From positions 1 through 64,000 of the forward strand of contig NIVC01003464.1 in assembly GCA_002269645.1 (NCBI GenBank): DNA of 64,000 bases, in the 5' to 3' direction. Positions 2,587 to 50,930 of this stretch are shown here, piece after piece. This DNA is from Macrostomum lignano (Eukaryota). A program made the translations under genes and the position numbers. The stretch's first letter is position 1; every line of letters begins with the position of its first letter. A model generated the notes under the pieces. That model ran no database searches. It was not told where the DNA came from and saw nothing but the letters and a program-made list of their open reading frames with translations.

Positions 2587-3863
2587 TGAAGGTTGTCATA
2601 AATTTGCTGACAACTACAAATATCAAAGAAACAAAACAAAGAACAGTTAGGCCTAATTGTCAACATTGCATTTCTCAACATAGTTGCCCCCAAGCTGCAT
2701 ACATTTGTGCCATCTCTCTGGCAGCTTGCTGCTGTCCTGGGTGAAGAATTCCATGGGGTCCCTTGTACCTACTGGCTGATGGCCGAGCTGAGTGCAGAAA
2801 GGCTTCTATAGCAATGGCCACAAAGAGGCTCTTTCATTTTAGGAAACAACCAGTAGTCACTAGGGGCCAGGTCAGGAGAATAGGCAGGGTGAGGCAGCAA
2901 CTTGAAGCCTAGTCTCCTGATGACATCCATAGTTGCATTGTAGGTATGCGGCCTAGCATTGTCCTACTGCAGCACAGTGCCCCTGGTGAGCCATTCCAAT
3001 ATTTCACAGTAGTACTGGGCATTGATGGTTCTGCCTTCAGGTAGCCACTCAATCAGCAAGATGCTTCTCTGTCCCAGAACACGGTGGCCATGTGCTTACC
3101 TGCTGACTATACTGCCTTGGCCTTGACTAATTGGGGTTTGTGAATAGCCTTCCAGATGCTGCTCTGCTGTTTCGTTTCCAGTTCGTAGAAGTAAAACCAC
3201 ATTTCATTACCAGTCACCAGGCAGCCAAAAAGTCAGGCTCATTTTGATAGGCATTGAGCAGGTGGCAGCACATCTGGACCCTCTCTTGCAGTTGGACAAG
3301 AGTCAGCAGTTTAGGGACCCATTGTGCAACAACTTGTGTCATATGTAGATGGTCAGAGATGATGAAAAGAATGCTCTTCATTGGTATTGCCAACAAGTCC
3401 TCTAACTGCCTCAGGGTTGCTCCACAATCATCATCCAGGGTATGCTGCACACGCTGGATATTGTCACTAGAAGTAGATGACCACGGTGCACCTAGGCAGG
3501 GAGCATCATCAACTGTCTCCTAGCCGTCCTCAAAGCACTGCACCCACTTTGACACAGTTTGTTTTGAAGGTGCATCCTCACCAAAGATTTGCAGTAGCTT
3601 GCAATAAATATCAGCCTGCTTCTTCTGCTGCTTCCACAAACAACCAAATGACAGTGCGCTTGGCAGCTTCACTTTTCTCTATACTGGCTAGAAGGGTGGT
3701 TTGAATGCCACTCAATTTCGGCTTTATCTCAAAAGCCAAAAGGAAGATTTTCCATAGACAATAAGATCAATGGTGCCTTAGTCTATAACAAAAATTTTGC
3801 CCCAAAGTACAAAAGAAACAGATGCTATATAAGTTTGTCAGCAAATTTATGACACAACCCTCG
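2587..3863 (-). mobile_element. Mariner (Tc1/mariner) DNA transposon, full-length but inactivated
   Basis: Imperfect ~30-bp TIRs (TGAAGGTTGTCATAAATTTGCTGACAA at 2587; TTGTCAGCAAATTTATGACACAACCCTCG ending 3863), TA on both flanks, 1277 bp long. Minus-strand transposase remnants WVPKLL, VTGNEMWFYFYE, QDNARPH and LLPHPAYSPDLAPSDYWLF with stops and frameshifts. Confidence 0.92.
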
Positions 3864-5496
3864 TACTTTTCAAACTTAATCATTTCAAAGCAATTTTCAT
3901 ATTAAGTGATTGTCATAAAAACTAATATAATGATATAATAGGGCCTATTTAAAGTGCTAATTTATAAAACTACTAGAATTTATAATATATAAAAAACATA
4001 AAAAGATTACAAATCTCTAAAATTTTAGGCTTCATTACTTAAGCTTAGCAAGGGAACTCTTTGCTTTGCTTGAAACCACAATGGCTATCACCAAAAAGTT
4101 TTATTCTTATTACTATAATGAATTACTTATTACCAAAATTACTAAAATATCTTGTGATTGTAATTTAACCAATTATAGTCTATATATAACACAGTAGATA
4201 GTATGTAAATATGCAAAGCAAAGCATAATACCTAAGAATTGATTGAATTATATATAGTCATGTGTATATAAGTTGCATGTACTATATTATATGCACTTTA
4301 TAGTAGAATATCTAAAAATAAGTAAACATGTTAGCAAGGCTCTCTCTAGCAAAACTAGAAACTATTTAGAGGTAAGTAAGGGTCTATTACAACTTAAACT
4401 ATATATCTTTTTGGCTATAAAAATTTTCATGGCAGATAAAATAACCTAATTGGCAAACAAAATAAACAAAATGACTATGAAAATTAGTAAACAAAAAGTT
4501 AACAAATAAAATGACCACATACCTATCATTGCATTAACTTATTTTGGCTTTTTGAATCCTGATTTCTTCCTAAGCTAAAAGCCATTAAATTGAAGTTTTT
4601 TATTTTTAAACTCAATACATTAAGGTGATATATATAAACATAATATGTACTATTAAGCATATATAGATGCCTAGGCTAGCCTAGGACTATAGTATAAAGA
4701 TAAGAAGCTACATTTCTATTCAAGAGGCAAGTTTACCAAAAAAAGAAATAGAAATTTCGATAAGAGATCTTTTAATATCATTTGCCTTTCTTATATAGCT
4801 CCATTGATATAGAGCTTATGTATAAACTAATAGTCTATACTCAAAAAATAATGTAGCACCCACTGTCCAAGTGTGGCTCTGTCTTAATCTTATAAGAATA
4901 ATGAGCCTTCATTAAAGTAGAATACAATACTTTTATTATAGTTTAATATATAGATTATATTTATAGGAAAAGCCTAGCCTAGTCAATATTGTCTCATTTT
5001 TATAAATGCTTAGATTATTTTAGAATTATTGCTTTAAAACTAAGTAGTATTGAAAACAGGAGCATCAAAAACATGCAATATTTCTTTTTCAAATTTGTTT
5101 GCCTGTGTTTCATCCTAAGCTAACATATTCAGGGCAATTACTATTGGTTCATATTGGGTTGTAGATATTTATTGATCAATAGTGTTTAAAAAAAATTATA
5201 GATATTGTGCTGAAGGATCGAACAAAATCAAAGACAGTTTTAATGCAAATTGTATGTAGTCCAAGTACAAGTCAAGTCAGTTTAGCCAGTGTAGAAAAGC
5301 AAGTATACTGTCCATCAGAGCACTTTGAGCTTATGCTCTACACCCTTAATCATCAGCTGCAGTAGCGAGGTTAGTATATAGGAACTGTATCCATGCTGCA
5401 AGCGCAGTCATCAGATGCTGCTTAATGAGATTTAAGATGGCATTATTCTATGGCCTGTACTGTCAGTAGCGAGGTTAGTATCTAAGAACTGTATCC

Positions 5497-7162
5497 ATGC
5501 TGCAGGCGCAGTCATCAGACGCCGCTGCTCAAGTAGACAACCTGCCCGAGCCTCTATCGGCCAGATTTGTCGATTCATTCGCTTATAAAACTGTGCGCGA
5601 CCGGCTGCCAGTGATCCTAGCCAAGGTGGCCGACTCAGTGTGTCGCAGAAAGTCGGAGTTTAATTCCACCAACATGGACCGAGTCAAATCCGTCATCATT
5701 GGCGGCGTCTCCCGGTTGCGCAACGAACTGCAGACAGACAAGCCGCTGCTGCCGCTGTCCGACTCCGCCTCGGACACGACCGCTTGGAATGACTACCTGG
5801 CCGAGCTGACTGAAACGCTTGGCCGAGCGCCGAGTTGGTTTAAAGAGCCCTGGCTGTATGTTGAATGCTACATGTATAGGCGGCTGCTGGAGCTGGTCAA
5901 TCTAGCCGATCTGACGGTCGGCATTGATCTGTTCGCGCCCGAGAAACGGCAAAGTTTGCTTGGCTCCGCCGCGCTGGCTGCCGCTGCCGCCGAAGCCGCT
6001 CTGGCAGCCGAGGCCGAAGCAGAGGCTGCCAACGGCGCGCCTCAGCTGCGCCGGCTGCTCCGGCTCTGCCTGTCAGCCAATCTGGCCGACCTGTCGCTGT
6101 CAGCTTTGGCCGAGGCGCACCAGCTGGCCGCGGATGACGCCAACTCCTCCGGATTGATCATCCTGCTGGACCACACCGATCAGTTTGTCGACTGTTTGCG
6201 CCAGCGCGGTCCTGCTGTCGCTGTTGTGCATGTGAGCTCCGACTGGAAATACTCTGCACACCTGGAGTGGAATTTGTCACTAATATATTTACACGGAATT
6301 CAAATAGGCATAGCATTCTGACTCACGCCATCAACCCCTGTGTGAGCGTGTGTATGAGTGCGTGCCTGTGTACAGTATTGGCGCCCTTGTGTGTAATGTG
6401 TTCAGGAGTCAGCGCCGATAACTATATCGGCGTGTATTACTTCACTGTGTTATTATTATGATCCAGAGTCCCCTCCCCCCCCAAAATTCCAGGTGTGCGC
6501 ATTGACGACATTTCTCGTTCTCTGAGTACGTGTTTGAGCAAGACTGAATGTACAATCATGTCCCGCAGATCGTGCTGGACAACGTCGGCCCGGAGCTGGT
6601 GTCGGACCTCTGCCTAGCCGAATGCCTTCTACGCGGTGGTCACGCTGGAAAAGTCCGGCTGCACACCAAAGCGGCGCCCTGGTTTGTGTCCGACGCTACT
6701 GAACTGGACTTGGCTGCCACGCTTGACTGGCTGGCCTCCGGCTCGGCCGGCCAATCATCCGTCCAGCTGGCCGAGTCGCTTCGGTCTCGCCTGTCTACCG
6801 GACAGCTATCGTCCGGTAGCGACCCGTTTTGGACAACTTGGCTAGCATTTGCCGACATGGAAACTTCGCCGCTGGGCGCAAAGCTTTATAAAAAGCTGAG
6901 CCAGGCTGACTGCGTTGTGCTCAAAGGCGATCTCAACTATCGCAAGGCCGTCAGTGATCTGGCCTGGCCGCCAACCGCACCATTGGCCAAAGCCGTCGGC
7001 CGCTTCCGTCCGGCGCCTCTGCTGTTAGTTCGCACTCTCAAATCGAACGTGGTGGCCGGTTTAGCGCCCGGACAAGCCGAGGCGGCCGACGCTCAGCATT
7101 CCGACTGGATGGTGGCCGGTAAATGCGGTGTTCTGCAGTTCCTGCCTGCGGAGAATGCTTGA
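5497..7162 (+). CDS. ARMT1: Damage-control phosphatase ARMT1 / DUF89 family; join(5497..6231,6569..7162), 442 aa
   Basis: FAYKTVRDRLPVIL, PWLYVECYMYRR, NLADLS, IVLDNVGPELVSDL, KGDLNYRK, LVRTLKS motifs. GTGAGC...CCGCAG intron (6232-6568) joins the two ORFs in frame. Confidence 0.93.
6320..6460 (+). mobile_element. Dispersed SINE-like family X, partial copy in ARMT1 intron
   Basis: CCCTGTGTGAGCGTGTGTATGAGTGCGTGCCTGTGTACAGTATTGG shared with copies at 8255, 36845 and 42400; ends in a TTATTATTAT tail. Confidence 0.65.
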
Positions 7163-7320
7163 CTTTTCCCTGGCTGACTGACTGACTGACTGACTGCTTA
7201 GTCCAGGCAAACAGATTCTAAAATGATGTACGGTAGTAGAAGAGATTTAAAAATACAGATTGGCGCAGAATTCTACAAGTATAATAAAAATATAATATTT
7301 GATTGCTGCCCCCCCAATTT

Positions 7321-7538
7321 GGCCAGATGTGCAACCGACGCATCTGAAGGCTGCGTACGGCTGTTCAGTCCAAGGACTGGGGGTTGAAACACACACCCTC
7401 AATTACCCCAGCTAATGCTGGCACCCATGCAGAGTTTTAAAGTGTTTTTCTCAATGACACAAATTGTTCCAGTGGAATCGGGAATCGAACCCCCGACCTT
7501 CAAGTCGTGAGTCCAACTCTCTAGCCACTAGGCTACAC
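7321..7538 (-). mobile_element. tRNA-derived SINE (copy 1)
   Basis: Reverse strand has an A-box (TAGCCTAGTGG) and a B-box (GGTTCGATTCC). The 3' part CCCCCAGTCCTTGGACTGAACAGCCGTACGCAGCCTTCAGATGCG is identical to the copy at 24001. Confidence 0.85.
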
Positions 7539-8254
7539 AGTTAATGAGAAATTAGTCAGTATAAATATTTTTCGTGATTTCTCATTACCAGTAACTGGTT
7601 GAATTTTGTAAAGTTTGAAGACAGTGCCTGTATTGGTTCAAAAGTTATAACATCCATCCCGTATTCCATCCTATTTAGAAATATAAAAAGCTATCTTTAC
7701 TACTCATGAAATTAGACGAACGCATTTTTTGCAAGTGATGTAGTAAGCTATTTTAGAGGATTATGAAGTGTTTGTTTGTAATTGCACATAGAATATTTCA
7801 AACGGCAGATTTCATGTCAGCACGAAATGTCATGTGCAGTTAGCAATGTTGCAGGCGTTTGAATCTATGGCGGAAAAATAGTGGCTTTGCTAGTACCATA
7901 TCTGATGGCATCCTTCGGGATAATTATTGGCATTGGTAATCAGGAAATCTATAGGAAACTTTAGACTAGAAAGTTATCACTCTTTTTCAACTATATATTG
8001 TCATTTTCTTTCGTTCATGTTGATGTGTTATTAGTCTTGCTTACAAACCGTTTTGAGCTTCCTATCTGCCTCTACTAGTGAATTGCGGCCATTCAGTCAA
8101 TGCTAAAATGTGATTTAACTGATTTCGTGTTTTTGCACACTGAAAAAGTAAATGTTACTAATACAATGTACGTCTTGTGTTTCTATTTACTATCACTTTC
8201 ATTATTTCATTCGTGATTACAACTAAGTGAATTCAGGGTTATTGTGCGATTCAC

Positions 8255-8458
8255 GCCCATGAGGGCCAGCCCCCGAGGCACAGAGTGTACATGCCTGACG
8301 ATTAGACAGTCAGTCAGTGCCGCTGTACACCCTGTGTGTGCCTGTGTACAGTATTGGGGCACTTGTATGTGCTCAGGACTCAGCGGAATGTGCGGATTTG
8401 CCTCAGTGCTGCTTTATGGCGAGTCGATGTCGCTATTATTATTAATTATTATTAAATC
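8255..8458 (+). mobile_element. Dispersed SINE-like family X copy
   Basis: CATGAGGGCC...GTGTACATGCCTGACGATT...GTACACCCTGTGTG...CAGCGGAATG, ending in an (ATT)n tail; homologous to 29075, 36845 and 42400. Confidence 0.7.
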
Positions 8459-8552
8459 AATGTCTAACGATTTCAGCCAAACAAAGACTCAAAAGAACCA
8501 AGAGCCGTCTATTAGATTAAATAAAACTCGATCATAAATTAAATTATTAGCG

Positions 8553-9153
8553 ATGCCGCCAAAAGCAGCAAAAAGTAAAACAACCAAGACTGCTGCTGCT
8601 ACTGCTTCGGCAAAGAAGACCCAGAAACAGCAAAAGGTGTCTGCTGAAGTGGAAGCCGACGACTCGCTACCGAGCAAATCGACTCCAGGTAAGAAGCGCC
8701 GGCGCACCCTGCCAATCAGACCGGCCCGGCAAGGCGGCCACTGCGTACTGATTTCGCACCTGCCGACGGCCTGCGCGAGCCGCAGCTTCGCCGATTTCTC
8801 AGCCAATTCGGCCGGGTTCACCGTGTCGAGTGCCCCGCTCGAAGTCCGGAGCCGGCAACGCCAAAGGCATCGCTTTTGTTGAAATGGCCGAACCGGCAGC
8901 TGCCAAGACGGTGGCCGAAACGCTGGATAATTACCTAATGTTCACCCGGCTGCTCAGGTGCAAGGTGGTGCCGGATCCAAAACGATTGACGTTCGCGTCG
9001 GACGGCCGGCTGAAGAAGCAGCCCAAGGCTAAGGAGCAGCCGACTGCCGTTTCTACAAAAGACTCCGCGGCGGCTGCGCGCGGTCGTTCGCGCCGATTGC
9101 GCGCTAAATTGCAAAGATTGAAGCAGTTGGATCCGGAGTTCGAGTTTGCTTAA
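8553..9153 (+). CDS. NIFK: NIFK / Nop15-like nucleolar RRM protein; intronless, two apparent 1-nt deletions (~8766, ~8828)
   Basis: Lys/Ala-rich N-terminus, then repaired RRM VLISHLP-GLREPQLRRFLSQFGRVHRVRVPRSKSGAGNAKGIAFVEM and the NIFK/Nop15 signature AETLDNYLMFTRLLRCKVV. Confidence 0.8.
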
Positions 9154-9423
9154 GCCTGGTTTCCAAGGCCCAGTTGATCGCCTTGCTTTTGTGACGCCTA
9201 GTTGACGTTAAAATAAAATATATGGACGCGCATCGCATATTATTGCATTTTTTAATCTGCGAAATACTTCGTTCTTCAGTAATTTCATTAAATCAGTAAC
9301 AAGGCATTTCTTGGAAGCTAGCTTCAGCATAATCGTATTATTTTTATGCATATTGGCTACCTTACCATGTTGTCTGTACCAGCACCGTGCTAGAGCGTTT
9401 AGTTGTAATATTTAATCAATGCT

Positions 9424-10335
9424 CCAGATCCTCTTAGTTCTATCCTAGCTATACCCTCCCAGATCCTCTTAGTTCTATCCCAGCTATACCCTCCCAGATC
9501 CTCTTAGTTCTATCCTAGCTATACCCTCCCAGATCCTCTTAGTTCTATCCTAGCTATACCCTCCCAGATCCTCTTAGTTCTATCCTAGCTATACCCTCCT
9601 AGATCCTCTTAGTTCTATCCCAGCTATACCCTCCCAGATCCTCTTAGTTCTATCCTAGCTATACCCTCCCAGATCCTCTTAGTTCTATCCTAGCTATACC
9701 CTCCCAGATCCTCTAGTTTTATCCTAGCTATACCCTCCCAGATCCTCTTAGTTCTATCCTAGCTATACCCTCCCAGATCCTCTAGTTCTATCCTAGCTAT
9801 ACCCTCCCAGATCCTCTAGTTCTATCCTAGCTATACCCTCCCAGATCCTCTTAGTTCTATCCTAGCTATACCCTCCAGATCCTCTTAGTTCTATCCTAGC
9901 TATACCCTCCCAGATCCTCTAGTTCTATCCTAGCTATACCCTCCCAGATCCTCTAGTTCTATCCTAGCTATACCCTCCCAGATCCTCTAGTTCTATCCTA
10001 GCTATACCCTCCCAGATCCTCTAGTTCTATCCTAGCTATACCCTCCCAGATCCTCTAGTTCTATCCTAGCTATACCCTCCCAGATCCTCTAGTTCTATCC
10101 TAGCTATACCCTCCCAGATCCTCTTAGTTCTATCCCAGCTATACCCTCCCAGATCCTCTTAGTTCTATCCTAGCTATACCCTCCCAGATCCTCTTAGTTC
10201 TATCCCAGCTATACCCTCCCAGATCCTCTTAGTTCTATGCCAGTGATACCCTCCCAGATCCTCTAGTTCTATGCCAGTGATACCCTCCCAGATCCTCTAG
10301 TTCTATGCCAGTGATACCCTCCCAGAACCTCTAGT
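9424..10335. repeat. Minisatellite, 34-35 bp unit CAGATCCTCTTAGTTCTATCCTAGCTATACCCTCC (~26 copies)
   Basis: Tandem periodicity read directly. Confidence 0.95.
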
Positions 10336-10462
10336 TTTATTCGAGCAAACCTCCAAGCCATATTCTGATACAACTTCTCGTAAACGAATGACTTGTGTTC
10401 CTCACTTTTTCAAATAAAATTGATAATCTTGAAAAATACTTGCAGCAACAGCATCGGCAGCC

Positions 10463-10702
10463 ATGAGCAAAGCCCAAAATCCCGAACTGAAAAATACCTG
10501 GATAAGCGCGTCTCAATCCAGCTCAACGGCAAACGTCGTATTAGCGGCGTATTGCGCGGCTTCGACCCTTTCATGAATGTGTGCTTGACGAAGCTGTCGA
10601 GATTCTGCGGCCTGACCAGCAACAGCAGCAGCAGCAGCGCATGGGCATGATTGTGGTGCGCGCAATTCCGTTGTCATCCTGGAATGCCTAGACAGGATCT
10701 GA
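10463..10702 (+). CDS. SNRPG: Small nuclear ribonucleoprotein G (SmG); intronless, three apparent 1-nt deletions
   Basis: Repaired translation MSKAQNPELKKYLDKRVSIQLNGKRRISGVLRGFDPFMNVCLDEAVEILRPDQQQQQQRMGMIVVRGNSVVILECLDRI*; matches the SmG pattern MSKAHPPELKK...GILRGFDPFMN...IGMVVIRGNS. Confidence 0.88.
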
Positions 10703-10865
10703 TCTGAAAAATAGCCTTATTGATCTGCTATTGATTGAATGAAATAACAAAATTCAACAATTTTTCTATCTCAATTGTTCATAGCAAGTCCGTGCTAGTT
10801 TCGAATAAAAAAATGTTTTGATATTAACCAGCTTACAGTACCCTGTTAGTGCCGAGATGTTAACA

Positions 10866-11592
10866 CCCCTCTAGATCCTAGAGTTGGTAGCGTCACCACC
10901 CCTCAAGATCCTAGAGTTGGTAGCGTCACCACCCCTCAAGATCCTAGAGTTGGTAGCGTCACGACCCCTCAAGATCCTAGAGTTGGTAGCGTCACCACCC
11001 CTCTAGATCCTAGAGTTGGTAGCATCACCACCCCTCAAGATCCTAGAGTTGGTAGCGTCACCACCCCTCAAGATCCTAGAGTTGGTAGCGTCACCACCCC
11101 TCTAGATCCTAGAGTTGGTAGCATCACCACCCTCAAGATCCTAGAGTTGGTAGCGTCACCACCCCTCTAGATCCTAGAGTTGGTAGCGTCACCACCCCTC
11201 TAGATCCTAGAGTTGGTAGCGTCACCACCCCTCAAGATCCTAGAGTTGGTAGCGTCACCACCCCTCAAGATCCTAGAGTTGGAAGCGTCACCACCCCTCT
11301 AGATCCTAGAGTTGGAAGCGTCACCACCCCTCAAGATCCTAGAGTTGGAAGCGTCACCACCCCTCAAGATCCTAGAGTTGGAAGCGTCACCACCCCTCAA
11401 GATCCTAGAGTTGGAAGCGTCACCACCCTCAAGATCCTAGAGTTGGAAGCGTCACCACCCTCAAGATCCTAGAGTTGGAAGCGTCACCACCCCTCAAGAT
11501 CCTAGAGTTGGAAGCGTCACCACCCTCAAGATCCTAGAGTTGGAAGCGTCACCACCCTCAAGTTCCTAGAGTTGGAAGCGTCACCACCCCTC
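10866..11592. repeat. Minisatellite, 33 bp unit CCCCTCAAGATCCTAGAGTTGGTAGCGTCACCA (~22 copies)
   Basis: Tandem periodicity read directly. Confidence 0.95.
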
Positions 11593-13461
11593 TCCCAGCT
11601 CTCTAAACTTAGTAGGCATCTTATTTCCCGTAAGGCCTGTTTTCTATTTGCTAGCAGCCTGTTGTTTCTGTAACTAATCTACGAAAAAATGTTAAATATT
11701 TCTTGCAGTAAAGAACTATGCTCCGGTGGCTGACCTGTTATTGGGAACTTAATTAATGTAATTTTGCTTGCATTTTCGCTAAATAATGTAACATTGTTTT
11801 GCGTAATTTTATGCTTTTTAGGTTCAATAAAGTAAGTGTTGGTGATTAATCACGGTTGAAATATGTCATTTGAAACCTGACACACTTGAGCGTATGAAAA
11901 GTTTTTTATGCTTATGTTCTTCTAGCTCGTATTTCTTGTTTCAACATTAGGACATAGGGCTCAGAAGCACAGATATAAAAGGTGATGATATTAACTCCTG
12001 TATCACTCTTGTCCGTGTACTACATGTAAATAACTTCATTCCGACAGTAGTCGAAATTATAGTAGAGTAGTTATTTTCATTCTGCTCTGGCGTCCGCTTG
12101 GGAATTGCTTTGAGCTCAGTCTAGTTATAGCCAGCAACGAAAGCAATATCTGGTCATCTCTTTGTGCCAACAGATCGCGCGGAATCCATCAGCTTGCTGA
12201 TTGTGTGCCTGCCAGTGCAATCTTTGCATGGAAAATGGAAATATATATTGCTCAAGCCAGTTATTCAGTCAGTTTCGGGTGAAGCCGAAGCTTCCACACG
12301 ATGCAAAAAAATAGCGTGAACTCCTCCATCCATATCGCTAGCAGTTGTCTATTAGTGAGTTCCCTTCTGTCCCAAACTGCGTTGATTACTTTTCCCAGAC
12401 TGAATCGCGTTTTTTCGTTGGTTGGAATTCCTGCGTGGTCGTGCGCCTGTTTTTTCTCTAAGATATTCGTAAGATTGCCCGGCTATTGCATTCATTTCTG
12501 CTTTGGTCTTTGCGAAAACCAAGTCAATCCCGATGATATTCCGATGGTTCTGCCCGGTTTCCAGAAAGTTTATACCGCATTCCATCGGCTTTTATTGAGA
12601 AGTGTTAATATTATGAATAAATAAGAAACCATTGTTGCTTATGCCTTGACGAAGTCTGTCGCGCGATAGTCCTCGAATGTTGGCGTGGTTGGGATAAGTG
12701 CCGCTGCGGGGCGTGAAAATCCCACGCTACTTGCCGCCGCTAATACTCTCTTGTCAAGAGTGATTCTCGTTGCGTAGATCTCAGAGCTGTCGGCTGCAGC
12801 TTCTCTCTTTAGACCTTGCATCGTTGCTATCGCGGGATTCGATTCGTCAATTCCCAGTAAGACCTCACCTTCAAGGGCTCCTTTCTCACCGGTATGGCAA
12901 TCTAATTAATAATCTGGCTGCGGAAGAGGCTGTAAGTGGTTCCGCTAGCGCCTACGGATCTGGCTAGCCGGAGCACTGCAGCAGTGCTAGCGATTCTCTT
13001 CGATGCTTTAAGCGCCGCTGCAGAGGAAAAAGTAATACCTCTACACTTGCACTTGCTCGGAGATTAGAATTCGATTAATGGCCGCGCCAATAGCAGCAGC
13101 AGAGGACGTTTTTTCGCTTCAATCCGAATTTCAAATTCCAATATATCGAAGTTAATGGTTACAAGTTTTTTAAATCAATAAACGCTCGTATCAGAGCTGA
13201 TTCGCTACTAATGGAGTGAACAATAGTGAAATATATATTTATGAATTTGTGCAGAAGAAGGGCTCGTTTCTCTTCTTCAACTAGGACATTGATGTTTAAC
13301 TTGGTTTATTTCTGTTTTCAACCTGCACGCAATGGTATATATTTATCGAACGTTCATGTAAGCTGGTTTATGCAGCTTAACTAGTACACTGATTGAAGCA
13401 ATATCAGTCTGGGATTTTTTCATTCTGGTTGTCTTTGACATGGCCGTCTTTGTCTGTTGGC

Positions 13462-14201
13462 TCACCTGCCCCATGGCATGCTTCCGTAGGCTCGCTTTCC
13501 CCATGGCATGCTTCCGTAGGCTCGCTTTCCCATGGCATGCTTCCGTAGGCTCGCTTTCCCCATGGCATGCTTCCGTAGGCTCGCTTGCCCCATGGCATGC
13601 TTCCGTAGGCTCGCTTTCCCCATGGCATGCTTCCGTAGGCTCGCTTTCCCCATGGCATGCTTCCGTAGGCTCGCTTTCCCCATGGCATGCTTCCGTAGGC
13701 TCGCTTGCCCCATGGCATGCTTCCGTAGGCTCGCTTGCCCCATGGCATGCTTCCGTAGGCTCGCTTGCCCCATGGCATGCTTCCGTAGGCTCGCTTTCCC
13801 CATGGCATGCTTCCGTAGGCTCGCTTTCCCCATGGCATGCTTCCGTAGGCTCGCTTGCCCCATGGCATGCTTCCGTAGGCTCGCTTGCCCCATGGCATGC
13901 TTCCGTAGGCTCGCTTGCCCCATGGCATGCTTCCGTAGGCTCGCTTGCCCCATGGCATGCTTCCGTAGGCTCGCTTTCCCCATGGCATGCTTCCGTAGGC
14001 TCGCTTTCCCCATGGCATGCTTCCGTAGGCTCGCTTGCCCCATGGCATGCTTCCGTAGGCTCGCTTCTCAGCATCGAATTCTTGATCTTCCCCGCCTTCA
14101 GAAGCTGAGGCAGCCCCGGAAGCGCACGTGATGGCTAGAAATAGCAGCATAATGGCTAGGTGAGCTCGGCCCCACACTGCAGCTGTCGTCCATGGCTTCA
14201 T
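13462..14201 (-). CDS. Neuropeptide precursor: signal peptide + acidic spacer + 20 x AYGSMPW-G-(K)R; one 1-nt deletion near 13529
   Basis: MKPWTTAAVWGRAHLAIMLLFLAITCASGAASA (hydrophobic signal), SEGGEDQEFDAE-KR, then 30-bp units encoding AYGSMPWGKR. Unit variation is at the synonymous Gly codon (GGA/GGC). The repaired frame ends WGR-stop (246 aa). Confidence 0.9.
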
Positions 14202-15171
14202 CCTAAGAAAATAGAGGAGTGAAATATTAAAAGCAATGATGAATTGACACCGCGTGCGTTTATCTTCGACAGGCCTGTGTAGTCAGTTAATCAGAGATGG
14301 ACCACCATCAATCAGCTGGCATACGTTTGCATAGACAAGGCGTTTCACTATATGCGCCGGCGATTAATTTAAATAGTGACAGCGCGATAAATTTTGCGGA
14401 TATTAAAATTTCCTTGCTAGGTGGTAGGTTCCTATGGTTCCTGAGTCGTAACGTACAAATTTTAGTTCGATTTCCGAAGTTTCCCGTGTGTTATCTAAAC
14501 GAATGTGGCCTGTGCTTTATTGATCTTCCTAATCTTTACTGTCTCACAGTCAAGGATGCTGCGATTGATCCTAAGAATAGCATCATTTGTCGGTGTGTTC
14601 GATCGTCTACAAAGCACCTTTTTAGCAGGTGTACCGTCTCTGGTTTGAGCATAGCCAGTTCTTGATTAGGTTCTCAAAAAGTTCTTGAATTTACTCATGC
14701 CAAGCTTCACTCACTTGATTCTCGCACTTACTTTGGACAGCTTGACTCCAAGAGGGTACTCGTTCTCTCTCCTTCGGTGCCTGCCTGCGTGAAGATTTTT
14801 CAGTTCACTGAAACTTTCAGGACCGGCCTGTCTTCCGATCGCTTTCTTACTTGCTGCGAGAAGCGAAACTGCGAAGCTCTCCCTACTGGAATTTTATTGA
14901 CTGAGCCGCGATCCCTTGCGCTCATCCCGACATCTCCATCGCAGGTGGCGCCCGCCACCCCATCTCGCCCCCACAGTTCCGATAAGCGCGTCTTCTCTGC
15001 CTGCCGTAGTTGATTGGGCGAATTGGGAGCGAATCAGTGCGCGGAATGCCAAAGCACTGTGTTTTGGGTCGCCTTAGTGGTAATTGGGAGAAAACTAAAT
15101 TAAACAAAATTATTGGTCCCGGATCTGCTATACACTCCCGAAAACTGTAAACGAAGCAAGGGCTTGTAGCA

Positions 15172-15845
15172 TGTCTAGATCGAGTGAGAGTAGCTTGTGT
15201 CGAGTAGGAGTAGCTTGTCTAGAGTAGGAGTAGCTTGTCTAGAGTAGGAGTAGCTTGTCTAGAGTAGGAGTAGCTTGTCTAGAGTTGGAGTAGCATGTCT
15301 AGAGTAGGAGTAGCTTGTCTAGAGTAAAAGTAGCTTGTCTGGAGTAGGAGTAGCTTGTCTAGAGTAGGATTAGCATGTCTAGAATAGTATTAGCTTGTCT
15401 GGAGTAGGAGTAGCTTGTCTAGAGTAGGAGTAGCATGTCTAGAGTAGGAGTAGCTTGTCTAGAGTAGGAGTAGCTTGTCTAGAGTAAAAGTAGCTTGTCT
15501 AGAGTAGGATTAGCATGTCTAGAGTAGGATTAGCATGTCTAGAATAGTATTAGCTTGTCTGGAGTAGGAGTAGCTTGTCTAGAGTAGGAGTAGCATGTCT
15601 AGAGTAAAAGTAGCTTGTCTAGAGTAGGATTAGCATGTTTAGAATAGTATTAGCTTGTCTAGAGTAGGAGTAGCATGTCTAGAGTAGGAGTAGCTTGTCT
15701 AGAGTAGGAGTAGCTTGTCTGGAGTTGGAGTAGCTTGTCTAGAGTAGGATTAGCATGTCTAGAATAGTATTAGCTTGTCTTGAGTAGGAGTAGCTTGTCT
15801 AGAGTTGGAGTAGCTTGTCTAGAGTAAAAGTAGCTTGTTTAGAGC
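15172..15845. repeat. Minisatellite, 20 bp unit AGAGTAGGAGTAGCTTGTCT (~33 copies)
   Basis: Tandem periodicity read directly. Confidence 0.95.
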
Positions 15846-16726
15846 TGAAAAGAACTCGAAAGTCGAGCAGAAGAACAAAATAAGGTCAGCAAAGTATAAA
15901 TATCATCCATCACTTGAATCAATCACAGCATTGAATTTTCAAATTTTCACATAAACCTTAGAGCAACTGACATGGTGACCGCCTGATCCGAAGATTTGTA
16001 TACGAGCGTAAATCTGGATTCCAGGGCTAATTGAGTCTCAGATTGATCACTTATCAGAGAATTATTTCGTTGTCAAATTAGATACGAGAATTGGTTTCTA
16101 CGCTTGTACCGGCAAATTATGATTGTTTTTTAACTATAGGGCTTCTCCGGCACGCAGGCTGGATTTAAATCCACGTTGTTTCAGAAAAGAGATTTGGGAG
16201 CACGGGATCTGAAAGATTGCGAGAAAGGTAAATGAGAGGGAAGCCGTGAAAGAGCAGCAAATCTAGTTGATGAGTTTGAAGCCTTTAGAACTATATTTAG
16301 AAGCTTTTGTACAAAGAACCAATTAATTATGTCGTCTTCGGCTTATGACTGAGCAACGGTGAAGCCGCTTAACGCTATCACAAACTTAACTGAGCAATGT
16401 GTGCATGTAGATTTGTAGGTCGAGACTCAAGCCACTATCATGACAGTCAGTGATTTGTTTACCTGAACGTTGTAAAGAGTGGCACTCTTCTTTATTAATG
16501 CCTGTCAGCTGCAACAAATAGCTCGTACTTGCGCTGGGGCACTGGGGGTAGCTCAGCGGTAGACGCATGTAATTCTCGTGCCAAATTACATTGGTTTGAT
16601 TCCATGCGTGACTGCATATTAATTTGGGGCTTGTGCATGAAAATTTGCCGGGAGTTGGTGGGAATTCTGGCTCATGAAGGCCAATCTCCAAGACACCGTG
16701 CGTATATTCCTGAAAATGAGTAAGTC

Positions 16727-16830
16727 AGGGCCGCTGTGTACCTTGTACACCCTGCGTGAACATGTGCCCCGTACATATCTGTGTTTGTGCGCTCAGATGT
16801 CAGGGCAATGGGCATGGCTGCTTGCCTCCT
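16727..16830 (+). mobile_element. Degenerate family X copy
   Basis: GGGCCGCTGTGTACC...GTACACCCTGCGTGAACATGTG...GTGCGCTCAG resembles the copies at 8255 and 29130. Confidence 0.45.
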
Positions 16831-18346
16831 TGCGGGCTGCAAGTTGACTGTCGCCTGAGATTTGAGGCAATTACCCGAAGTCCCTGCAAACTAAGTAACG
16901 CTAATGATAGTATAAAAGGCTAATATAAGATTATATGCCGGGATTTATCGGTAGAATTGGGTATCCGTGGCGCTGGCATGTCATAAGGCAGTCGACGAAA
17001 CGCCGAGTATTACGGGGTCAGTACCGGCTGTGAAAAGTAGCCTGCTAGCTGGAGTCGCAACAGGTGGTCTAAGACAGGCCAATAGGTTCGCCGGAGTCCT
17101 TGTCTCGGGAATTGATGCAACAGCACGGTCTCGACTACGACCGTCTCGTACCGTCCGAAACAACGACGCTCTCTGGTGGTTAGATAGATAAATAGATCTG
17201 TTGTGATGTTAAACATGAATCAATGTAGACCCGCTCTCTCTGAGATTCTTCCTTCACTCACTCAATTCACGCGCTCTGGTTACACCAAACGGGAACGGCT
17301 TCTTTTGTAAAACCAAGAAAATAAAATGTAACAAAACTTTAGCAGAAAGTTTTAGGAGAAAAATCAACAGTTCACGATTATGACACAGAAAACCTAATGA
17401 AAGGTACGATTGTGACAATTTGGTTTGCAATGCGAATGCAGTGAAATATCCAAAGCAGAAAAGTGGAGGATAAAAGCCCGGAGAGGAAAACTTCATGCAG
17501 ATAAGAGTATACAAAGAATTGTCTCTGTCGCTGATCGATGTGGAAGGTGAAAAACTGCAACTGACGAGAGCTACCCTGCTGCTCAGTCGGCGCGGTGGGT
17601 GGTGAAGTGGTTGAGGAGTGGAAGACAAGGCGTATGCATAGCTCGTTTACATCGCAAAAGTTGCTTGTTGGTGGCACACGCCAAATTTCGGCCTTGGAGA
17701 GCATGTTCGCGGTGCGTGCCCTGGCCTAGCCCTGGCGGTGGCTTGAGACGACAGAAAATAGCAACTATAGGTCTGATCGCTTCAAGACCGACCAGCTGGT
17801 ATTATTGGACTATATTAACGCCGCGCATTGAGGTGCAAACACAGCCTAGTCACTATATACGTGACGGTGTATTGAGAGCTGATTAACCTGTCAATCAAGA
17901 TTTATTGGCGAGTTGAGCAGGGCTCGCCAGTCTCGTCATGCGTATCGCTTCTCAGCCTTAACCTCCCCGTCATTCTGCTCTGCGCTGACTCCTTGCCTCA
18001 CCATTCACAATTTCTGGCTAACTCACCTTTTCCCAGCCCGACAACTGTTGTAGGTCAGCCTAATGTGATATTCATAAAAGGCTGCCGAGAGTGCTGAATG
18101 TTTGGGTACTCCAGTCTTTCAGCCGAATACGATTTTCTATAGCCAATCTTTACTTGTCATTTCTTTTCTGTCTCGTTGATAATAACTCAGGTGTTGGCAG
18201 CTCAAGAAACGCTGAGTCCTCAAAGCAGGATAGAAGGATATATGGTTAAAGAAGGGTGCAGGTTAAGAATGCAGACAAGGATATTAAGGATACGGCTGCA
18301 CAGGTAGGAAACACAATAGACGCTTGAGTCTACTCTCGGATCTGTA

Positions 18347-19758
18347 TTTGCACAGCAGCCAAGTGAAAAAAATTGATCCTTGCCAACACTCCCAACCCTG
18401 CAGTCTGCGCGTGGCGTTACCTTTTCGGTTTCTTTTCAACAACTCATTTGCATAAAGTGCACGCCGAATGTCGTGGTGAAGTTCTTGAACGTTCGGAGAG
18501 ATGGCGCTTAGTTGTTTTTTTCCGAATTCGGCTATTTAACAAGGTTAGCAGTCTACAATGTAAGGAAAGGATCTGCGAAGCTAATCAAGCCTTACTTCAT
18601 CGAGCTAATAATAGCGCACACTAAAAGATGATGCTCCGAGGAAGATACAAGCCACTCTCCGATCGTCTCGTAATAAGTAGGAGGAAAGATAGGTTTGGGG
18701 CAAATTTTTGTTGATTCATACGAACGTATGAGATTATAGTAACTAAAAAATGAACAAACAAGAAGACGAATAGGGACATTGGGAGTTCCGTCAACTGGGT
18801 CACTCGATCTTTCCAGCTGGTCCGTCTCTCAGAGTCAAATGCAGACTGCTTCTGCTGCTGCTGCTGAAATGTCACGCGCGCCGAACTTCTGCATTAGTCA
18901 GTCAAAGCGCTGAGTCTGTCTTCAAAATAGACGACAAACTGAAGACAAGGAGACGGACTTGATCGATGCCGTTCGCCAAAGTCTGCACGGAAATCATCCG
19001 CAGTGGCAGCCCACAGCGCACGCAACCGAGCTCAGGGCCATGCAAACCTAGCATTATCGAAAAGCTGCTACCCAATCCGATATCTGTTCACGAATGCTTT
19101 GCAATGTCGTATTAACTTTTTTAAAGCTGTTTTCGCGCTACTGCAGACATCTCGCGTTATAATTAATTCGATCTTTGATTTATTAGGCAAAAAAATTATA
19201 CCCTCCTGACTGACTAACATCAATAATGTTGCCGGCGGAATTCGACGTGAATCAGAGGAACCAGAGTTTTTTATTGACGATCTCGCAACAGTCTAGGAAC
19301 CACTTCATGGTTTTCAGCCAGCCAGTTGCAGCAACGATATGCCTCCTCATTGTTCTAGTTTTTTTACGAGCTACCTTATCTGAAGTGGCTTCACTGGATA
19401 TTTTAAATAACCAATGCAACGATTTTTCTCATTTGTTTGTCTTATAAAGGAAGTCTAATTTGGTTTCATTTTAGTACGAGCGGGTTTCCAGCATAGATAA
19501 CATTTAGCATGCTACGAGCTTCCTTACATTGTAGACTGCTAACCTTGTTAAATAGCCGAATTCGAAAAAAAACAAATAAGCGCCATCTCTCCGAACGTTC
19601 AAGAACTTCACCACGACATTCGGCGTGCACTTTATCAGTAAAGCATGCATGCAAATGAGGTGCTGAAAAGGAACCGAAAAGGTAACGCCACGCGCAGACT
19701 GCAAGGGTGTTGGGAGTGTTGGCAAGGATCAAATTTTTTCACTTGGCTGCTGTGCAAA
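18347..19758. mobile_element. Non-autonomous DNA element with ~220-240 bp terminal inverted repeats
   Basis: 18347-18567 and 19520-19758 are near-identical inverted copies (TTTGCACAGCAGCCAAGTG...CTACAATGTAAGGAA). GTA on both flanks (18344-46, 19759-61). No transposase inside. Confidence 0.75.
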
Positions 19759-21371
19759 GTATTCTCAAGAGACAAGAAATACACTTTCCTTCTACTTCAA
19801 TACGAGAGTATACTGCATAGTTCATATATATTTATTATCCCTGCTGGATTGCAATCCTCCGAGGCTGTCATTGTCACCGCTAAAAGCAGCTTGAGGCTTT
19901 AAAAATAGTTATACGAGCTATAGTCAAAAGTCAGCCAGTCTGCTTGGGCTTAAAGTTTGAGAACGTGAAGGGACTGACCTAATCTCTATTGAGGGGATCA
20001 GCCATTATGCTAATGCCCTACTTCTTATCAATCAGGATTTACTGCCATTCAAAGAGAGAGTAGTCAAAGCCGAAATCTCTTTTCCTATTCGCGCATCGAA
20101 AAATTGGATTCCGCAGCTGTCACAGGTGACAAAATGCGTGGGTCGCAGCGATAATCTCTCGAATGGTAACTTCAGGACTAACTGCTCACTTTTAAGGTTA
20201 GCCATCTTCGACTTAGAATGCCGCTATTGACTCTAGAGTGCATCACTTTAAAGATGATTTTCTATTGTTCAATTCTCTGAAGCACCTTCACAGCGTCGAC
20301 GCAGCAGGCGTCTTGTTTGACAATAAATTGACGTCTTCATTTCAAATCCAATACGATGACCGACAGAGCTTGTATCTCGATCGAACAGTTTGCTATCAAA
20401 CGAGGCCAATTTTTAACTAGCCACGACACTGGCTTGTACTTCGTCGATTCGTACATCAGCGCCTGGGATCTAATGTTGAATTTGAATGCTACACTCTAAC
20501 CAGTCTTGCTCTGATTACCACCGGTCAACTACTAGCTTGTACATTTATATCGATTACTCCAGAAAGGATCCCAATTTCATTTGAGACTCAAACGTGCTCT
20601 AGTCTGTCTTTTGACTTTGTTGATTGATGAAATCCGACCGAGGTTTTTCGACTATCGTCTGTGCCCTGAACTCAAATCATTATAGCGACTGGGTCAATCA
20701 TTAGTGAGTTGATCATAAAGCGACCGTGGACGCTGAACAAAGGACAAAGAAGGACGCCAGCAGCAACATCTTTCAGAAAAATCATGGTCAAGCATCGATT
20801 TCCATGTAGTTAAGATCAGAATTATCAAATTGCTTGCCTCCTCCCATCTGTCTGTTGTCAACTGGGAATTCTCAACTTGGTTGGCTTAGCAAAGATTTAT
20901 ATCTCAAATGAAACAGGGCCTAAATATCTGTGCTGAAGTGCAGAAAACGACCCTTCCGGCCTCTCAGACCTTTTATCATCAGATTGTTCCTGCTTATCTG
21001 ATTAGTGACTTGAAATTGGTTCCTAATGTCGCATCATTCTTCTTGTTAATTTAATCGCTGTTTACTATCCTTCTGTCTACTATCCATTATTGATTTTGAT
21101 ATTCCAGAACTTTCAGCCTTATTTTGAAAATATATATGCTTGCACTTCCGCGCAGTTTGTATTGGAGCCAGCCAGCTGTTACCACGACTTAAATTATGCT
21201 GCGCCTGTTCACTTGGCTCATTAATTATTAATTATTTCATTTTAGCCAGCAATATACGCTCGTAGATGAAACTTTTCTACACAGCTTGATCCGGGTTTAA
21301 GCAGGAGTAAAAAAGAACGCAACAGTGCCAAATTGACCTATTTAGTGGGAATATTATTGTTGAAGTGATGC

Positions 21372-36844: not shown

Positions 36845-37470
36845 GCCATGAGGGCCAACCCCCAAGGCGCAGAGAGTGTACATGCCTGACGATTGGAAAG
36901 TCAAAGCTGGCCGATGTACACCCTGTGTGAGCGTGTGTACACCCTGTGTGAGCGTGTGTACACCCTGTGTGAGCGTGTGTACACCCTGTGTGAGCGTGTG
37001 TACACCCTGTGTGAGCGTGTGTACACCCTGTGTGAGCGTGTGTACACCCTGTGTGAGCGTGTGTACACCCTGTGAGAGCGTGTGTACACCCTGTGTGAGC
37101 GTGTGTACACCCTGTGTGAGCGTGTGTACACCCTATGTGAGCGTGTGTACACCCTGTGTGAGCGTGTGTACACCCTGTGTGAGCGTGTGTACACCCTGTG
37201 TGAGCGTGTGTACACCCTGTGAGAGCGTGTGTACACCCTGTGTGAGCGTGTGTACACCCTGTGTGAGCGTGTGTACACCCTATGTGAGCGTGTGTACACC
37301 CTGTGTGAGCGTGTGTACACCCTGTGTGAGCGTTTGTATGAGTGCGTGCCAGCGGAATGGGCAGAATTGCCTCAACGCTGGTTGTGGGGTGATTTCGCCG
37401 AAGCGCTTGCGCCAGGGTGCCCCACAGCCCAGCTGCGAGTTATTAATTAATTATTAATTAATTATTAAAT
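36845..37470 (+). repeat. Family X copy with the same 21 bp unit expanded (~20 copies) and an AT-rich tail
   Basis: Head CATGAGGGCCAACCCCC...GTACATGCCTGACGATTGGAAAGTCA, array 36915-37335, tail (TTAA/ATT)n at 37440-37470. Confidence 0.9.
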
Positions 37471-45782: not shown

Positions 45783-46019
45783 GCCGTGTGTGGCCGGTGC
45801 TGCAATACAATGCACAAGCTAAGTTAATAGCTTGTAAATCTGTCATAAGTTATATGCCATGATAAGAGCGAGCCAAATTCTATATCGCACAATTATAGAT
45901 TAAAATATTGCGTAATAAACTAACTCGTTGGGGCGTTATTGCTTTTCAATAACCTATTTTTGGCCCAAATTATGTTTGAAGTCCGGCCTAAGCCATGATG
46001 GATACATAGGAAAAATTGG

Positions 46020-50619: not shown

Positions 50620-50930
50620 CTCTTGTCCTGACACCAACCCGTGGCACTCCTGACATCTGCGTGTACTTGAGCTACTCCTGACACCTACTCGGGTCACTCC
50701 TGATACCTACTCGTTCTACTTCTGAAACCTACTCGGGCCACTCCTGACATCTACTTAAGCCACTCCTGACACCTACTTGGACCACTCCTGACATCTACGA
50801 GTACTTGGGCCACTCCTGACACCTACTTAAGCCACTCCTGACACCTACTTGGACCACTCCTGACACCTACTTGGACCACTCCAGACATCTATTTAAGCCA
50901 CTCCTGACACCTACTTGGACCACTCCTGAC
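50620..50930. repeat. Second array of the 22 bp CACTCCTGACACCTAC family
   Basis: Same unit as 46020-46790, more degenerate. Confidence 0.85.

What the first reader, a model, noticed from the sequence alone, without database searches (positions are those of the whole stretch)
13462..14202. Prepropeptide with 20 identical AYGSMPWamide peptides
Seen: signal peptide, acidic spacer, KR, then 20 x AYGSMPW-G separated by KR and ending G-R-stop. The only unit polymorphism is the synonymous Gly codon GGA/GGC, which marks this repeat as coding, unlike the many non-coding arrays nearby. A 3' splice site (TTTTCTTAG) lies 1 nt before the ATG. Established: prohormone convertase cleavage at KR, carboxypeptidase trimming and PAM amidation of Gly would release AYGSMPW-NH2. 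Inference: I cannot place this PWamide in a named family; candidates to test are MIP/AstB Wamides and APGWamide/cerebral peptide. It may be an uncharacterised flatworm neuropeptide. Repeat-maskers would hide it.
Basis: partly seen in the sequence, partly recalled or inferred. Interest (0 to 1): 0.75.

Follow-up and report, generated by a model that had tools for sequence, protein, structure and literature searches.

The report
Macrostomum PWamide neuropeptide precursor gene
This is a real flatworm (Macrostomum lignano) neuropeptide gene encoding about 20 tandem copies of AYGSMPW-amide, but the peptide and its family (flatworm NPP-5/"PWamide" Wamides) are already published, so it is a correct call of something known.

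Summary
The minus strand of 13462-14201 holds an ATG, a signal-peptide-like N-terminus, an acidic spacer, KR, then 20 thirty-base units encoding AYGSMPWG(KR). As assembled, the window encodes 17 complete units, an 18th fused to an out-of-frame tail, and units 19-20 in another frame.

The same locus in the GenBank Macrostomum lignano assembly (NIVC01004687.1) is 99.8% identical over 17.9 kb. There the gene is an intact 741-nt ORF with 20 copies ending G-R-stop. Of 30 indels between the two sequences, 25 are 1-nt homopolymer differences, and the same kind of deletion breaks the neighbouring Sm/LSM gene in the window. The frameshift is therefore most likely an assembly error.

The gene is not new. 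GenBank lists it as a hypothetical protein (PAA46830.1/PAA69966.1, modelled with only 5 copies). AYGSMPWamide was synthesised and tested by Dandamudi et al. 2022 as a product of a Macrostomum Wamide propeptide. Peptide and architecture match the flatworm NPP-5/PWamide family (planarian SAWRDMPWamide, confirmed by mass spectrometry; schistosome AAYMDLPWamide). Receptor and function are unknown.

Verdict: a correct neuropeptide call, already known, of low interest.

The parts
14203..14211 (-). Polypyrimidine tract plus AG (TTTTCTTAG), 1 nt upstream of the ATG. Candidate 3' splice acceptor, for either cis-splicing or spliced-leader trans-splicing.
   Evidence: Sequence read. 38.8% of M. lignano genes are trans-spliced (PMC5730564). 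Use of this site is inferred, not shown.
14103..14201 (-). Start codon and signal-peptide-like leader, aa 1-33 (MKPWTTAAVWGRAHLAIMLLFLAITCASGAASA).
   Evidence: Kyte-Doolittle hydrophobic core at aa 15-25 (above 2.5), small-residue c-region and an ASA|S site. 100% identical to the N-terminus of GenBank PAA46830.1. Aligns with the Smed-NPP-5 signal peptide from M18.
14061..14102 (-). Acidic spacer SEGGEDQEFDAE followed by the first KR cleavage site.
   Evidence: Translation. Same position as the spacer ENSDLIDAL-KKR in Smed-NPP-5.
13462..14060 (-). Array of twenty 30-bp units encoding AYGSMPWG plus KR; the last unit is AYGSMPWG-R-TGA. The Gly codon (GGC/GGA) pattern across units 1-20 is CAACCC CAACCC AAAC AAAC.
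   Evidence: The intact equivalent is at L021:7267-7866.
13529..13531 (-). Frameshift site in unit 18: a run of three G where every other unit, and the same unit in NIVC01004687.1, has four.
13404..13461 (-). Sequence past the true stop. It is read as coding only because of the frameshift; the as-assembled ORF ends at TGA 13404-13406. It is really the start of the 3' UTR.
   Evidence: The L021 ORF stops at the TGA equivalent to 13462-13464.
13305..13310 (-). AATAAA polyadenylation-signal-like hexamer about 150 nt after the TGA at 13462-13464.
   Evidence: Sequence read. Its function is inferred.

Best explanation
The locus is a single-coding-exon neuropeptide precursor gene of the flatworm Macrostomum lignano, belonging to the flatworm NPP-5/'PWamide' group of Wamide peptides.

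Proposed mechanism:
1. The mRNA, probably spliced or trans-spliced at the acceptor 1 nt before the ATG, is translated into a preproprotein of about 246 aa.
2. The signal peptide directs it into the secretory pathway.
3. Prohormone convertases cut at each KR (a single R at the C-terminus).
4. A carboxypeptidase E-type enzyme trims the basic residues.
5. Peptidylglycine alpha-amidating monooxygenase converts the exposed Gly into a C-terminal amide.
6. The result is 20 identical AYGSMPW-NH2 peptides per precursor (17 from the sequence exactly as assembled), presumably released from neurons to act on a still unidentified receptor, most plausibly a MIP/sex-peptide-receptor-type GPCR.

The 1-nt deletion in unit 18 of this window is most likely a long-read assembly error, not biology.

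Shown: sequence anatomy, identity with the GenBank M. lignano gene, an intact copy at the same locus, and similarity to NPP-5.
Inferred from established prohormone processing: cleavage and amidation.
Unknown: the expressing cells, receptor and physiological role.
For: Anatomy: ATG, leader, acidic spacer, KR and 20 x AYGSMPWG(KR).

Identity:
- P0073 (PAA46830.1, PAA69966.1, UniProt A0A267DC19, M. lignano) is 99% identical over aa 1-96, E 6.6e-57.
- Contig NIVC01004687.1 aligns to window 21328..3474 at 99.79%.
- That contig carries an intact 741-nt ORF with 20 copies and the same Gly-codon pattern.

Error signature:
- 25 of 30 indels between the two sequences are 1-nt homopolymer differences, against 5 mismatches.
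- Window-specific deletions also break the adjacent Sm/LSM gene, which is intact in L021.
- The public M. lignano assembly is PacBio/Canu-based and highly redundant.

Second copy: paralog NIVC01001276.1 also has 20 units. It differs within the array only at the Gly third position and by one A-run deletion.

Literature:
- AYGSMPWa was synthesised as a product of a Macrostomum Wamide propeptide (PMC9234716).
- NPP-5 peptides are SAWRDMPWa and PNWKDMPWa (confirmed by MS) and AAYMDLPWa and AAYIDLPWa (PMC2953531).
- The S. mansoni PWamide gene marks a neuron subcluster (PMC11349301).

Similarity: BLASTP against Smed-NPP-5 gives 47% identity over 107 aa including the leader. The same precursor layout is seen.
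Against: - No transcript, peptide or expression data could be examined here for this locus.
- The signal peptide was judged by a hand-made hydropathy and -3/-1 check, not by SignalP.
- The second peptide that the 2022 paper attributes to propeptide Mlig032062.g1 (GRTNNKNVFRWa) is encoded nowhere in the window or in the two GenBank loci. That published gene model may be a different paralog or a different transcript structure.
- Two of three assembled copies carry a frameshift, so a real defective copy is not excluded.
- Pairwise and HMMER E-values for repeat proteins are inflated. Unrelated multi-copy precursors (GSEFLamide, myomodulin) also score highly.
- AYGSMPWa gave no current on three Macrostomum DEG/ENaC channels, so no receptor is known.
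Confidence: 0.9

Rival explanations
1. The window copy is a genuinely frameshifted allele or duplicate. It would be a partly degraded gene copy in the polyploid DV1 line, still able to yield 17 amidated peptides plus an aberrant C-terminal tail.
For: Two of the three assembled copies (the window and NIVC01001276.1) have 1-nt deletions at different units. The DV1 genome carries extra chromosome copies and 180 Mb of duplicated blocks, so redundancy could relax constraint.
Against: Both deletions lie in homopolymer runs. 25 of 30 indels between the window and the near-identical NIVC01004687.1 are of this type, with almost no substitutions. The same kind of deletion breaks a conserved Sm/LSM gene in the window three times. 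The same G4 to G3 change recurs five times in the nearby 33-bp array.
Confidence: 0.12
2. The peptide is a true orthologue of the bilaterian MIP/allatostatin-B system, not merely a flatworm-specific PWamide, and signals through a MIP/SPR-type GPCR.
For: It has a C-terminal Wamide. Planarian NPP-5 peptides carry two Trp (W-x4-W) and are classed as 'Wamide' by Collins et al.. Dandamudi et al. treat the Macrostomum precursor as the Wamide propeptide and report a longer MIP-like peptide, GRTNNKNVFRWa, from it. MIP is listed among polyclad flatworm peptides.
Against: AYGSMPWa has one Trp only, with Tyr at the upstream aromatic position. Its aromatic spacing is x4, not the x6-7 of MIPs. The MIP-like peptide is absent from this locus. 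No receptor data exist. Short-peptide similarity cannot establish orthology.
Confidence: 0.35
3. The array is a non-coding minisatellite like its neighbours, and the reading frame is fortuitous.
For: The window is full of equally homogeneous arrays. All six frames of the 30-bp array are open.
Against: It is the only array with an in-frame ATG, a leader and KR/G processing grammar. A gene is annotated here in GenBank. The peptide is published. The precursor resembles an MS-validated planarian precursor, leader included. Copy number (20) and peptide sequence are conserved between paralogs.
Confidence: 0.02
4. The precursor is related to arthropod GSEFLamide/EFLamide precursors, which were among the best HMMER hits.
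For: Many hits with 40-60% identity are x-MGSEFLGKR or x-PGSEFLGKR repeat precursors. They share A-x-G-S...G-K-R with AYGSMPWGKR.
Against: Most shared residues are the processing signals (GKR), summed over about 17 repeats. The C-terminal motif that defines peptide families differs (-MPWa against -EFLa). A myomodulin-type precursor (PMGMLRLGKR) scores the same way, so the match reflects architecture and not descent.
Confidence: 0.03

Closest known systems
Macrostomum lignano gene BOX15_Mlig029361g1/g2 (PAA46830.1, PAA69966.1; UniProt A0A267DC19), and the AYGSMPWa peptide attributed to propeptide Mlig032062.g1 in Dandamudi et al. 2022 (PMC9234716)
   Same: Same species. The 47-aa N-terminal region and the AYGSMPWG(KR) units are identical. 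The genomic locus is the same as NIVC01004687.1 (99.8% over 17.9 kb), with the same downstream Sm/LSM and ARMT1-like neighbours.
   Different: The GenBank product has only 5 peptide copies, although the annotated 740/741-nt span holds 20. The implied 450-nt 'intron' lies in an array that contains no GT dinucleotide, so the model is probably an artefact of a collapsed transcript. The window has a 1-nt deletion in unit 18. The published propeptide is said also to encode GRTNNKNVFRWa, which none of the three loci encodes.
Flatworm NPP-5 / PWamide precursors (Smed-npp-5; Sm-npp-5 and Sj-npp-5, Smp_340860; Maritigrella GVWSNDPWamide)
   Same: Layout is signal peptide, short acidic spacer, dibasic site, then tandem short peptides ending -PW-Gly-KR. 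The peptide fits A-[Y/W]-x-x-[M/L]-P-W-NH2: AYGSMPWa against (S)AWRDMPWa and (A)AYMDLPWa. BLASTP gives 47% identity over 107 aa.
   Different: The peptide has seven residues rather than eight. It has Gly-Ser where the others have a basic or hydrophobic residue followed by Asp. It has 20 identical copies, against 5 identical copies plus one or two variants in the planarian and a much shorter, 111-aa precursor in the schistosome. It has no C-terminal non-repeat peptide.
Myoinhibitory peptide / allatostatin-B (Wamide superfamily)
   Same: Multi-copy precursor of C-terminally Trp-amidated peptides. Flatworm NPP-5 is grouped as 'Wamide', and the 2022 study treated the Macrostomum gene as the Wamide propeptide.
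   Different: The MIP signature is W-x6-7-W-amide. Here there is a single Trp with Tyr four residues upstream. No receptor evidence exists, and the peptide did not gate the three Macrostomum DEG/ENaC channels tested.
APGWamide / cerebral peptide prohormone (planarian cpp-1: VPGWa, TPGWa)
   Same: Short Trp-amide peptides in multi-copy precursors.
   Different: Those are tetrapeptides ending -PGWamide and are encoded by a separate flatworm gene. Here the peptide ends -MPWamide and has seven residues.
Arthropod GSEFLamide/EFLamide and molluscan-type myomodulin precursors
   Same: About 10-residue periodic units ending G-K-R in many identical copies. These gave high HMMER scores.
   Different: The C-terminal pharmacophore differs (-EFLa, -LRLa). 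The similarity is confined to processing sites and A-x-G-S.

Membership tests
Flatworm NPP-5 / PWamide neuropeptide precursors | N-terminal secretory signal peptide | tested here: met
   Hydrophobic core at aa 15-25 and an ASA|S cleavage-type site (heuristic only). The leader aligns with the Smed-NPP-5 signal peptide.
Flatworm NPP-5 / PWamide neuropeptide precursors | Tandem short peptides ending Pro-Trp-Gly, flanked by dibasic cleavage sites | tested here: met
   20 x AYGSMPWG with KR between units. Smed-NPP-5 has 5 x SAWRDMPWG-KR plus PNWKDMPWG.
Flatworm NPP-5 / PWamide neuropeptide precursors | Peptide core A-[Y/W]-x-D-[M/L]-P-W-amide, as in planarian and schistosome members | tested here: inconclusive
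   Ala, the aromatic residue, Met, Pro and Trp match. The conserved Asp is Ser, and the peptide is one residue shorter. Maritigrella GVWSNDPWa shows that the core varies.
Flatworm NPP-5 / PWamide neuropeptide precursors | Amidated peptide detectable in tissue; neuronal expression | not testable with these tools
   MS confirmation exists for the planarian and neuronal expression for the S. mansoni miracidium. None was available for this gene.
MIP / allatostatin-B (Wamide) | C-terminal Trp-amide | tested here: met
   Each unit has ...PW-G-KR. Amidation is inferred from the Gly donor.
MIP / allatostatin-B (Wamide) | Second conserved Trp, W-x6-7-W spacing | tested here: not met
   AYGSMPW has one Trp, with Tyr at -6, giving x4 spacing. 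The MIP pattern is taken from PMC3890597.
MIP / allatostatin-B (Wamide) | Activates a MIP/SPR-type GPCR or a Wamide-gated DEG/ENaC channel | not testable with these tools
   The only published assay found no response from three Macrostomum DEG/ENaC channels. No GPCR has been tested.
APGWamide / cerebral peptide | Tetrapeptides ending Pro-Gly-Trp-amide | tested here: not met
   The peptide ends Met-Pro-Trp and has 7 residues. Flatworm GWamides are encoded by cpp-1.
GSEFLamide / EFLamide | C-terminal -SEFL-amide | tested here: not met
   The hits share only A-x-G-S and GKR.

The most novel reading that the evidence does not exclude
The M. lignano PWamide gene really encodes 20 identical AYGSMPWamide copies, four times the number in the public protein model. 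On this reading it is the macrostomid representative of NPP-5, and its PWamides are the flatworm branch of the MIP/Wamide system, acting through a MIP/SPR-type receptor. That would give an experimentally tractable entry, in a transgenic flatworm model, to the still unknown function of flatworm PWamides.
Probability: 0.3. Interest if true: 0.35.

Novelty: already known. Interest (0 to 1): 0.2.

Why it matters
The gene confirms that a repeat-rich stretch of the M. lignano genome hides a bona fide high-copy neuropeptide precursor. It also shows two practical annotation problems:
- Long-read homopolymer errors frameshift the array in two of three assembled copies.
- The public protein model collapses 20 peptide copies to 5.

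For flatworm neurobiology it places the Macrostomum peptide in the NPP-5/PWamide family, which is also present in schistosomes and has no known receptor or function. It opens no new question, because the peptide itself is already in the literature.

Tried and rejected
- **The search for homologous proteins with the 265-aa ORF:** nothing found, although the exhaustive HMMER search later found the GenBank protein. The word index evidently misses it.
- **The search for homologous proteins with a GRTNNKNVFRW + AYGSMPW composite query:** nothing found.
- **Exact look-up of the as-assembled ORF:** not on record.
- **Degenerate back-translated DNA pattern against metagenome contigs:** 19 isolated single matches and no arrays. 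These are chance hits.
- **Search for the second published peptide, GRTNNKNVFRW:** looked for in all six frames of the window and of L020/L021, by tblastn and by fuzzy regex. It is absent.
- **Neighbouring ARMT1-like exon, tried for organism identification:** best hits were only 44-47% identical, so uninformative.
- **Pfam on the precursor:** only a sub-threshold ATX_III match, treated as chance.
- **Rfam and tRNA scans of the window:** nothing.
- **McVeigh et al. 2009, the original npp-5 paper:** not available in the library.
- **Supplement of the 2022 JBC paper:** the text held does not contain the propeptide sequence.
- **Splice donor hypothesis:** I considered that CAG|GTGAGC overlapping the stop codon is a donor leading to a downstream exon. 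I rejected it because the GenBank product ends at GR-stop, an AATAAA lies about 150 nt downstream, and no further peptide-like exon was found downstream.

Full report
**1. What the window contains**

On the minus strand an ATG at 14201-14199 is preceded by TTTTCTTAG (14211-14203) and one G. Translation gives three parts:
- MKPWTTAAVWGRAHLAIMLLFLAITCASGAASA
- SEGGEDQEFDAE
- KR

Twenty 30-bp units follow, GCCTACGGAAGCATGCCATGGGG[A/C]AAGCGA (AYGSMPWGKR). They start at 14060 and recur every 30 nt to 13491. Tandem Repeats Finder reports period 30, 20.0 copies and 98% matches.

The leader has a hydrophobic core at residues 15-25 and a small-residue ASA|S site. This is a hand-made check, not SignalP.

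The Gly codon alternates GGC/GGA in the order CAACCC CAACCC AAAC AAAC. That pattern suggests block duplications.

**2.

Unit 18 is 29 bp. Its run of G is three long, not four, at about 13529-13531. The consequences are:
- The ORF as assembled (14201..13404, 265 aa) has 17 complete units.
- An 18th AYGSMPW is fused to an out-of-frame tail.
- Units 19-20 and the G-R-TGA ending (13464-13462) are in another frame.

**3. Is it coding or just another satellite?**

The window holds roughly twenty large tandem arrays, and some are just as homogeneous. All six frames of the 30-bp array are open. So neither ORF length nor the single synonymous variable site is strong evidence.

The distinguishing feature is the processing grammar. 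A six-frame scan of the whole window for three or more regularly spaced G-[KR]-[KR] motifs without stops found this array and one other cluster, three motifs at about 58312-58405. That second cluster is not a repeat array and has no ATG or leader in front of it.

**4. Related sequences**

An exhaustive HMMER search of 1.84 billion representatives returned P0073. It is 96 aa, 99% identical to residues 1-96, with E 6.6e-57. It corresponds to GenBank PAA46830.1 and PAA69966.1 and UniProt A0A267DC19, named 'hypothetical protein BOX15_Mlig029361g1/g2 [Macrostomum lignano]'. Its sequence is the same leader and spacer, four AYGSMPWGKR units and a final AYGSMPWGR.

The two encoding contigs are from assembly GCA_002269645.1:

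| Locus | Contig | Gene length | State of the array |
|---|---|---|---|
| L021 | NIVC01004687.1 | 741 nt | Intact ORF, 20 units, ends GR-stop, same Gly-codon pattern as the window |
| L020 | NIVC01001276.1 | 740 nt | 20 units, a different Gly-codon pattern, a 1-nt A-run deletion in unit 12 |

All three loci share downstream Sm/LSM and ARMT1-like genes.

**5. The frameshift is probably an assembly error**

- L021 aligns to window 21328..3474 at 99.79%, with 5 mismatches and 30 gap openings.
- Of those 30 gaps, 25 are single-base homopolymer length differences. They include five more G4 to G3 changes in the 33-bp array at 10864-11592.
- Window-specific deletions at 10662, 10581 and 10490 split the neighbouring conserved Sm/LSM gene over three frames. 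That gene is intact in L021.
- The public assembly is a Canu assembly of PacBio data. It has 180 Mb of near-identical duplicated blocks, and 15% of the genome is simple or tandem repeat (PMC5730564).

I put about 85% on an assembly error and about 12% on a real defective copy. Either way the locus can still yield at least 17 peptides.

**6. Annotation problem in GenBank**

The annotated gene spans 740/741 nt but the product has 96 aa. That implies a 450-nt 'intron' of exactly 15 units. The array contains no GT dinucleotide at all, so a canonical intron is impossible there. The 5-copy model is most likely a collapsed short-read transcript. This is an inference from lengths; I could not see the GenBank feature table.

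**7. What is already known**

- The string AYGSMPW occurs in one work in the searchable literature, held as both a preprint and a journal article. This is Dandamudi et al. 2022 (PMC9234716).
[quoted passage not shown] Neither peptide gave any response on three Macrostomum DEG/ENaC channels.
- GRTNNKNVFRW is not encoded in the window or in L020/L021. That gene model may be another paralog or a different transcript structure. This point remains unresolved.

**8. Family**

Collins et al. 2010 (PMC2953531) list the flatworm NPP-5 peptides:
- Planarian PNWKDMPWa and SAWRDMPWa (five copies), both confirmed by MS.
- Schistosome AAYMDLPWa and AAYIDLPWa.

Their supplement classes npp-5 as 'Wamide'. It gives the precursor as signal peptide, ENSDLIDAL, KKR and then tandem -DMPWG-KR units. 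That is the same layout as here.

AYGSMPWa shares Ala, the aromatic residue, Met, Pro and Trp with SAWRDMPWa. BLASTP of the intact precursor against Smed-NPP-5 gives 47% identity over 107 residues including the leader, with E 2e-22. That E-value is inflated by the repeats.

Other relatives in the literature:
- A polyclad has GVWSNDPWamide.
- The S. mansoni PWamide precursor is 111 aa.
- The S. mansoni gene, Smp_340860, marks a neuron subcluster.

Families considered and not accepted:
- APGWamide-type peptides are encoded by a different flatworm gene, cpp-1.
- The MIP signature W-x6-7-W is not met.
- High HMMER scores to GSEFLamide and myomodulin precursors reflect shared G-K-R periodicity, not descent.

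**9. Mechanism**

The steps are signal-peptide cleavage, convertase cleavage at KR, carboxypeptidase trimming and Gly-directed amidation, giving 20 x AYGSMPW-NH2 ([M+H]+ 810.360). These steps are inferred from the well-established prohormone pathway and from MS proof for the planarian homologue. They are not shown for this gene. Receptor and physiological role are unknown.

The acceptor next to the ATG fits the high rate of spliced-leader trans-splicing in this species, 38.8% of genes. Its use here is untested.

**10. Verdict**

This is a correct identification of a neuropeptide precursor. However, the gene is in GenBank, the peptide is published, and the family is named. The useful additions are:
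- assignment to the NPP-5/PWamide family;
- the true copy number, 20 against 5 in the public model;
- recognition of the frameshift as a probable assembly artefact.

Novelty: already known. Interest: low.

Noticed in passing
window 10457-10696 (+): The Sm/LSM-family gene next to the precursor is split over three reading frames in the window by single-base homopolymer deletions at 10662, 10581 and 10490. It is intact in NIVC01004687.1. This indicates that the window sequence carries uncorrected long-read indel errors.
   Followed up: yes
L020:10001-10740 and L021:7126-7866 (GenBank NIVC01001276.1 and NIVC01004687.1): The public protein models PAA46830.1 and PAA69966.1 contain 5 peptide copies, although the annotated gene span holds 20. 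The implied 450-nt intron lies in an array with no GT dinucleotide, so it is probably a collapsed-transcript artefact.
   Followed up: partly
window 10864-11592: The 33-bp tandem array shows five G4 to G3 differences relative to the same array in NIVC01004687.1. This is the same error type as the frameshift in the neuropeptide array.
   Followed up: partly
window 29150-29705 and 36915-37338; 58960-59530 and 60306-60815; 46025-46792 and 50664-50930: Three pairs of separate tandem arrays share the same repeat unit: a 21-bp unit CGTGTGTACACCCTGTGTGAG, a 21-bp unit ATAATCTATAGACCTAGCTGG, and a 22-bp unit TCCTGACACCTACTTGGGCCAC. They may be dispersed satellite families or parts of repeated elements.
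   Followed up: no
window 37587-45815 (-): An SLC26/SulP-type anion transporter gene (Sulfate_transp and STAS domains) is spread over several exons. Large tandem arrays (39947-41358, 44571-45124) lie between its exons.
   Followed up: no
window 5497-7162 (+): An ARMT1-like damage-control phosphatase gene (PF01937) in two long exons. The best database relatives are only 44-47% identical. It is syntenic with the neuropeptide gene in both GenBank contigs.
   Followed up: partly
window 56161-58147 (-): A leucine-rich-repeat plus immunoglobulin-domain protein with a poly-Gln region (LRR_8, Ig_3/I-set).
   Followed up: no
window 26732-27667 (-): A 311-aa ORF in a GC-rich stretch (56% GC) with no Pfam match. 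It may be an exon of an uncharacterised gene.
   Followed up: no
window 14166-14195 (-), residues 3-12 of the ORF: The n-region of the leader reads PWTTAAVWGR, a W-x5-W-G-R string that superficially resembles a MIP-type Wamide. It lies upstream of the hydrophobic core, so it would not be released as a peptide. Probably coincidence.
   Followed up: no
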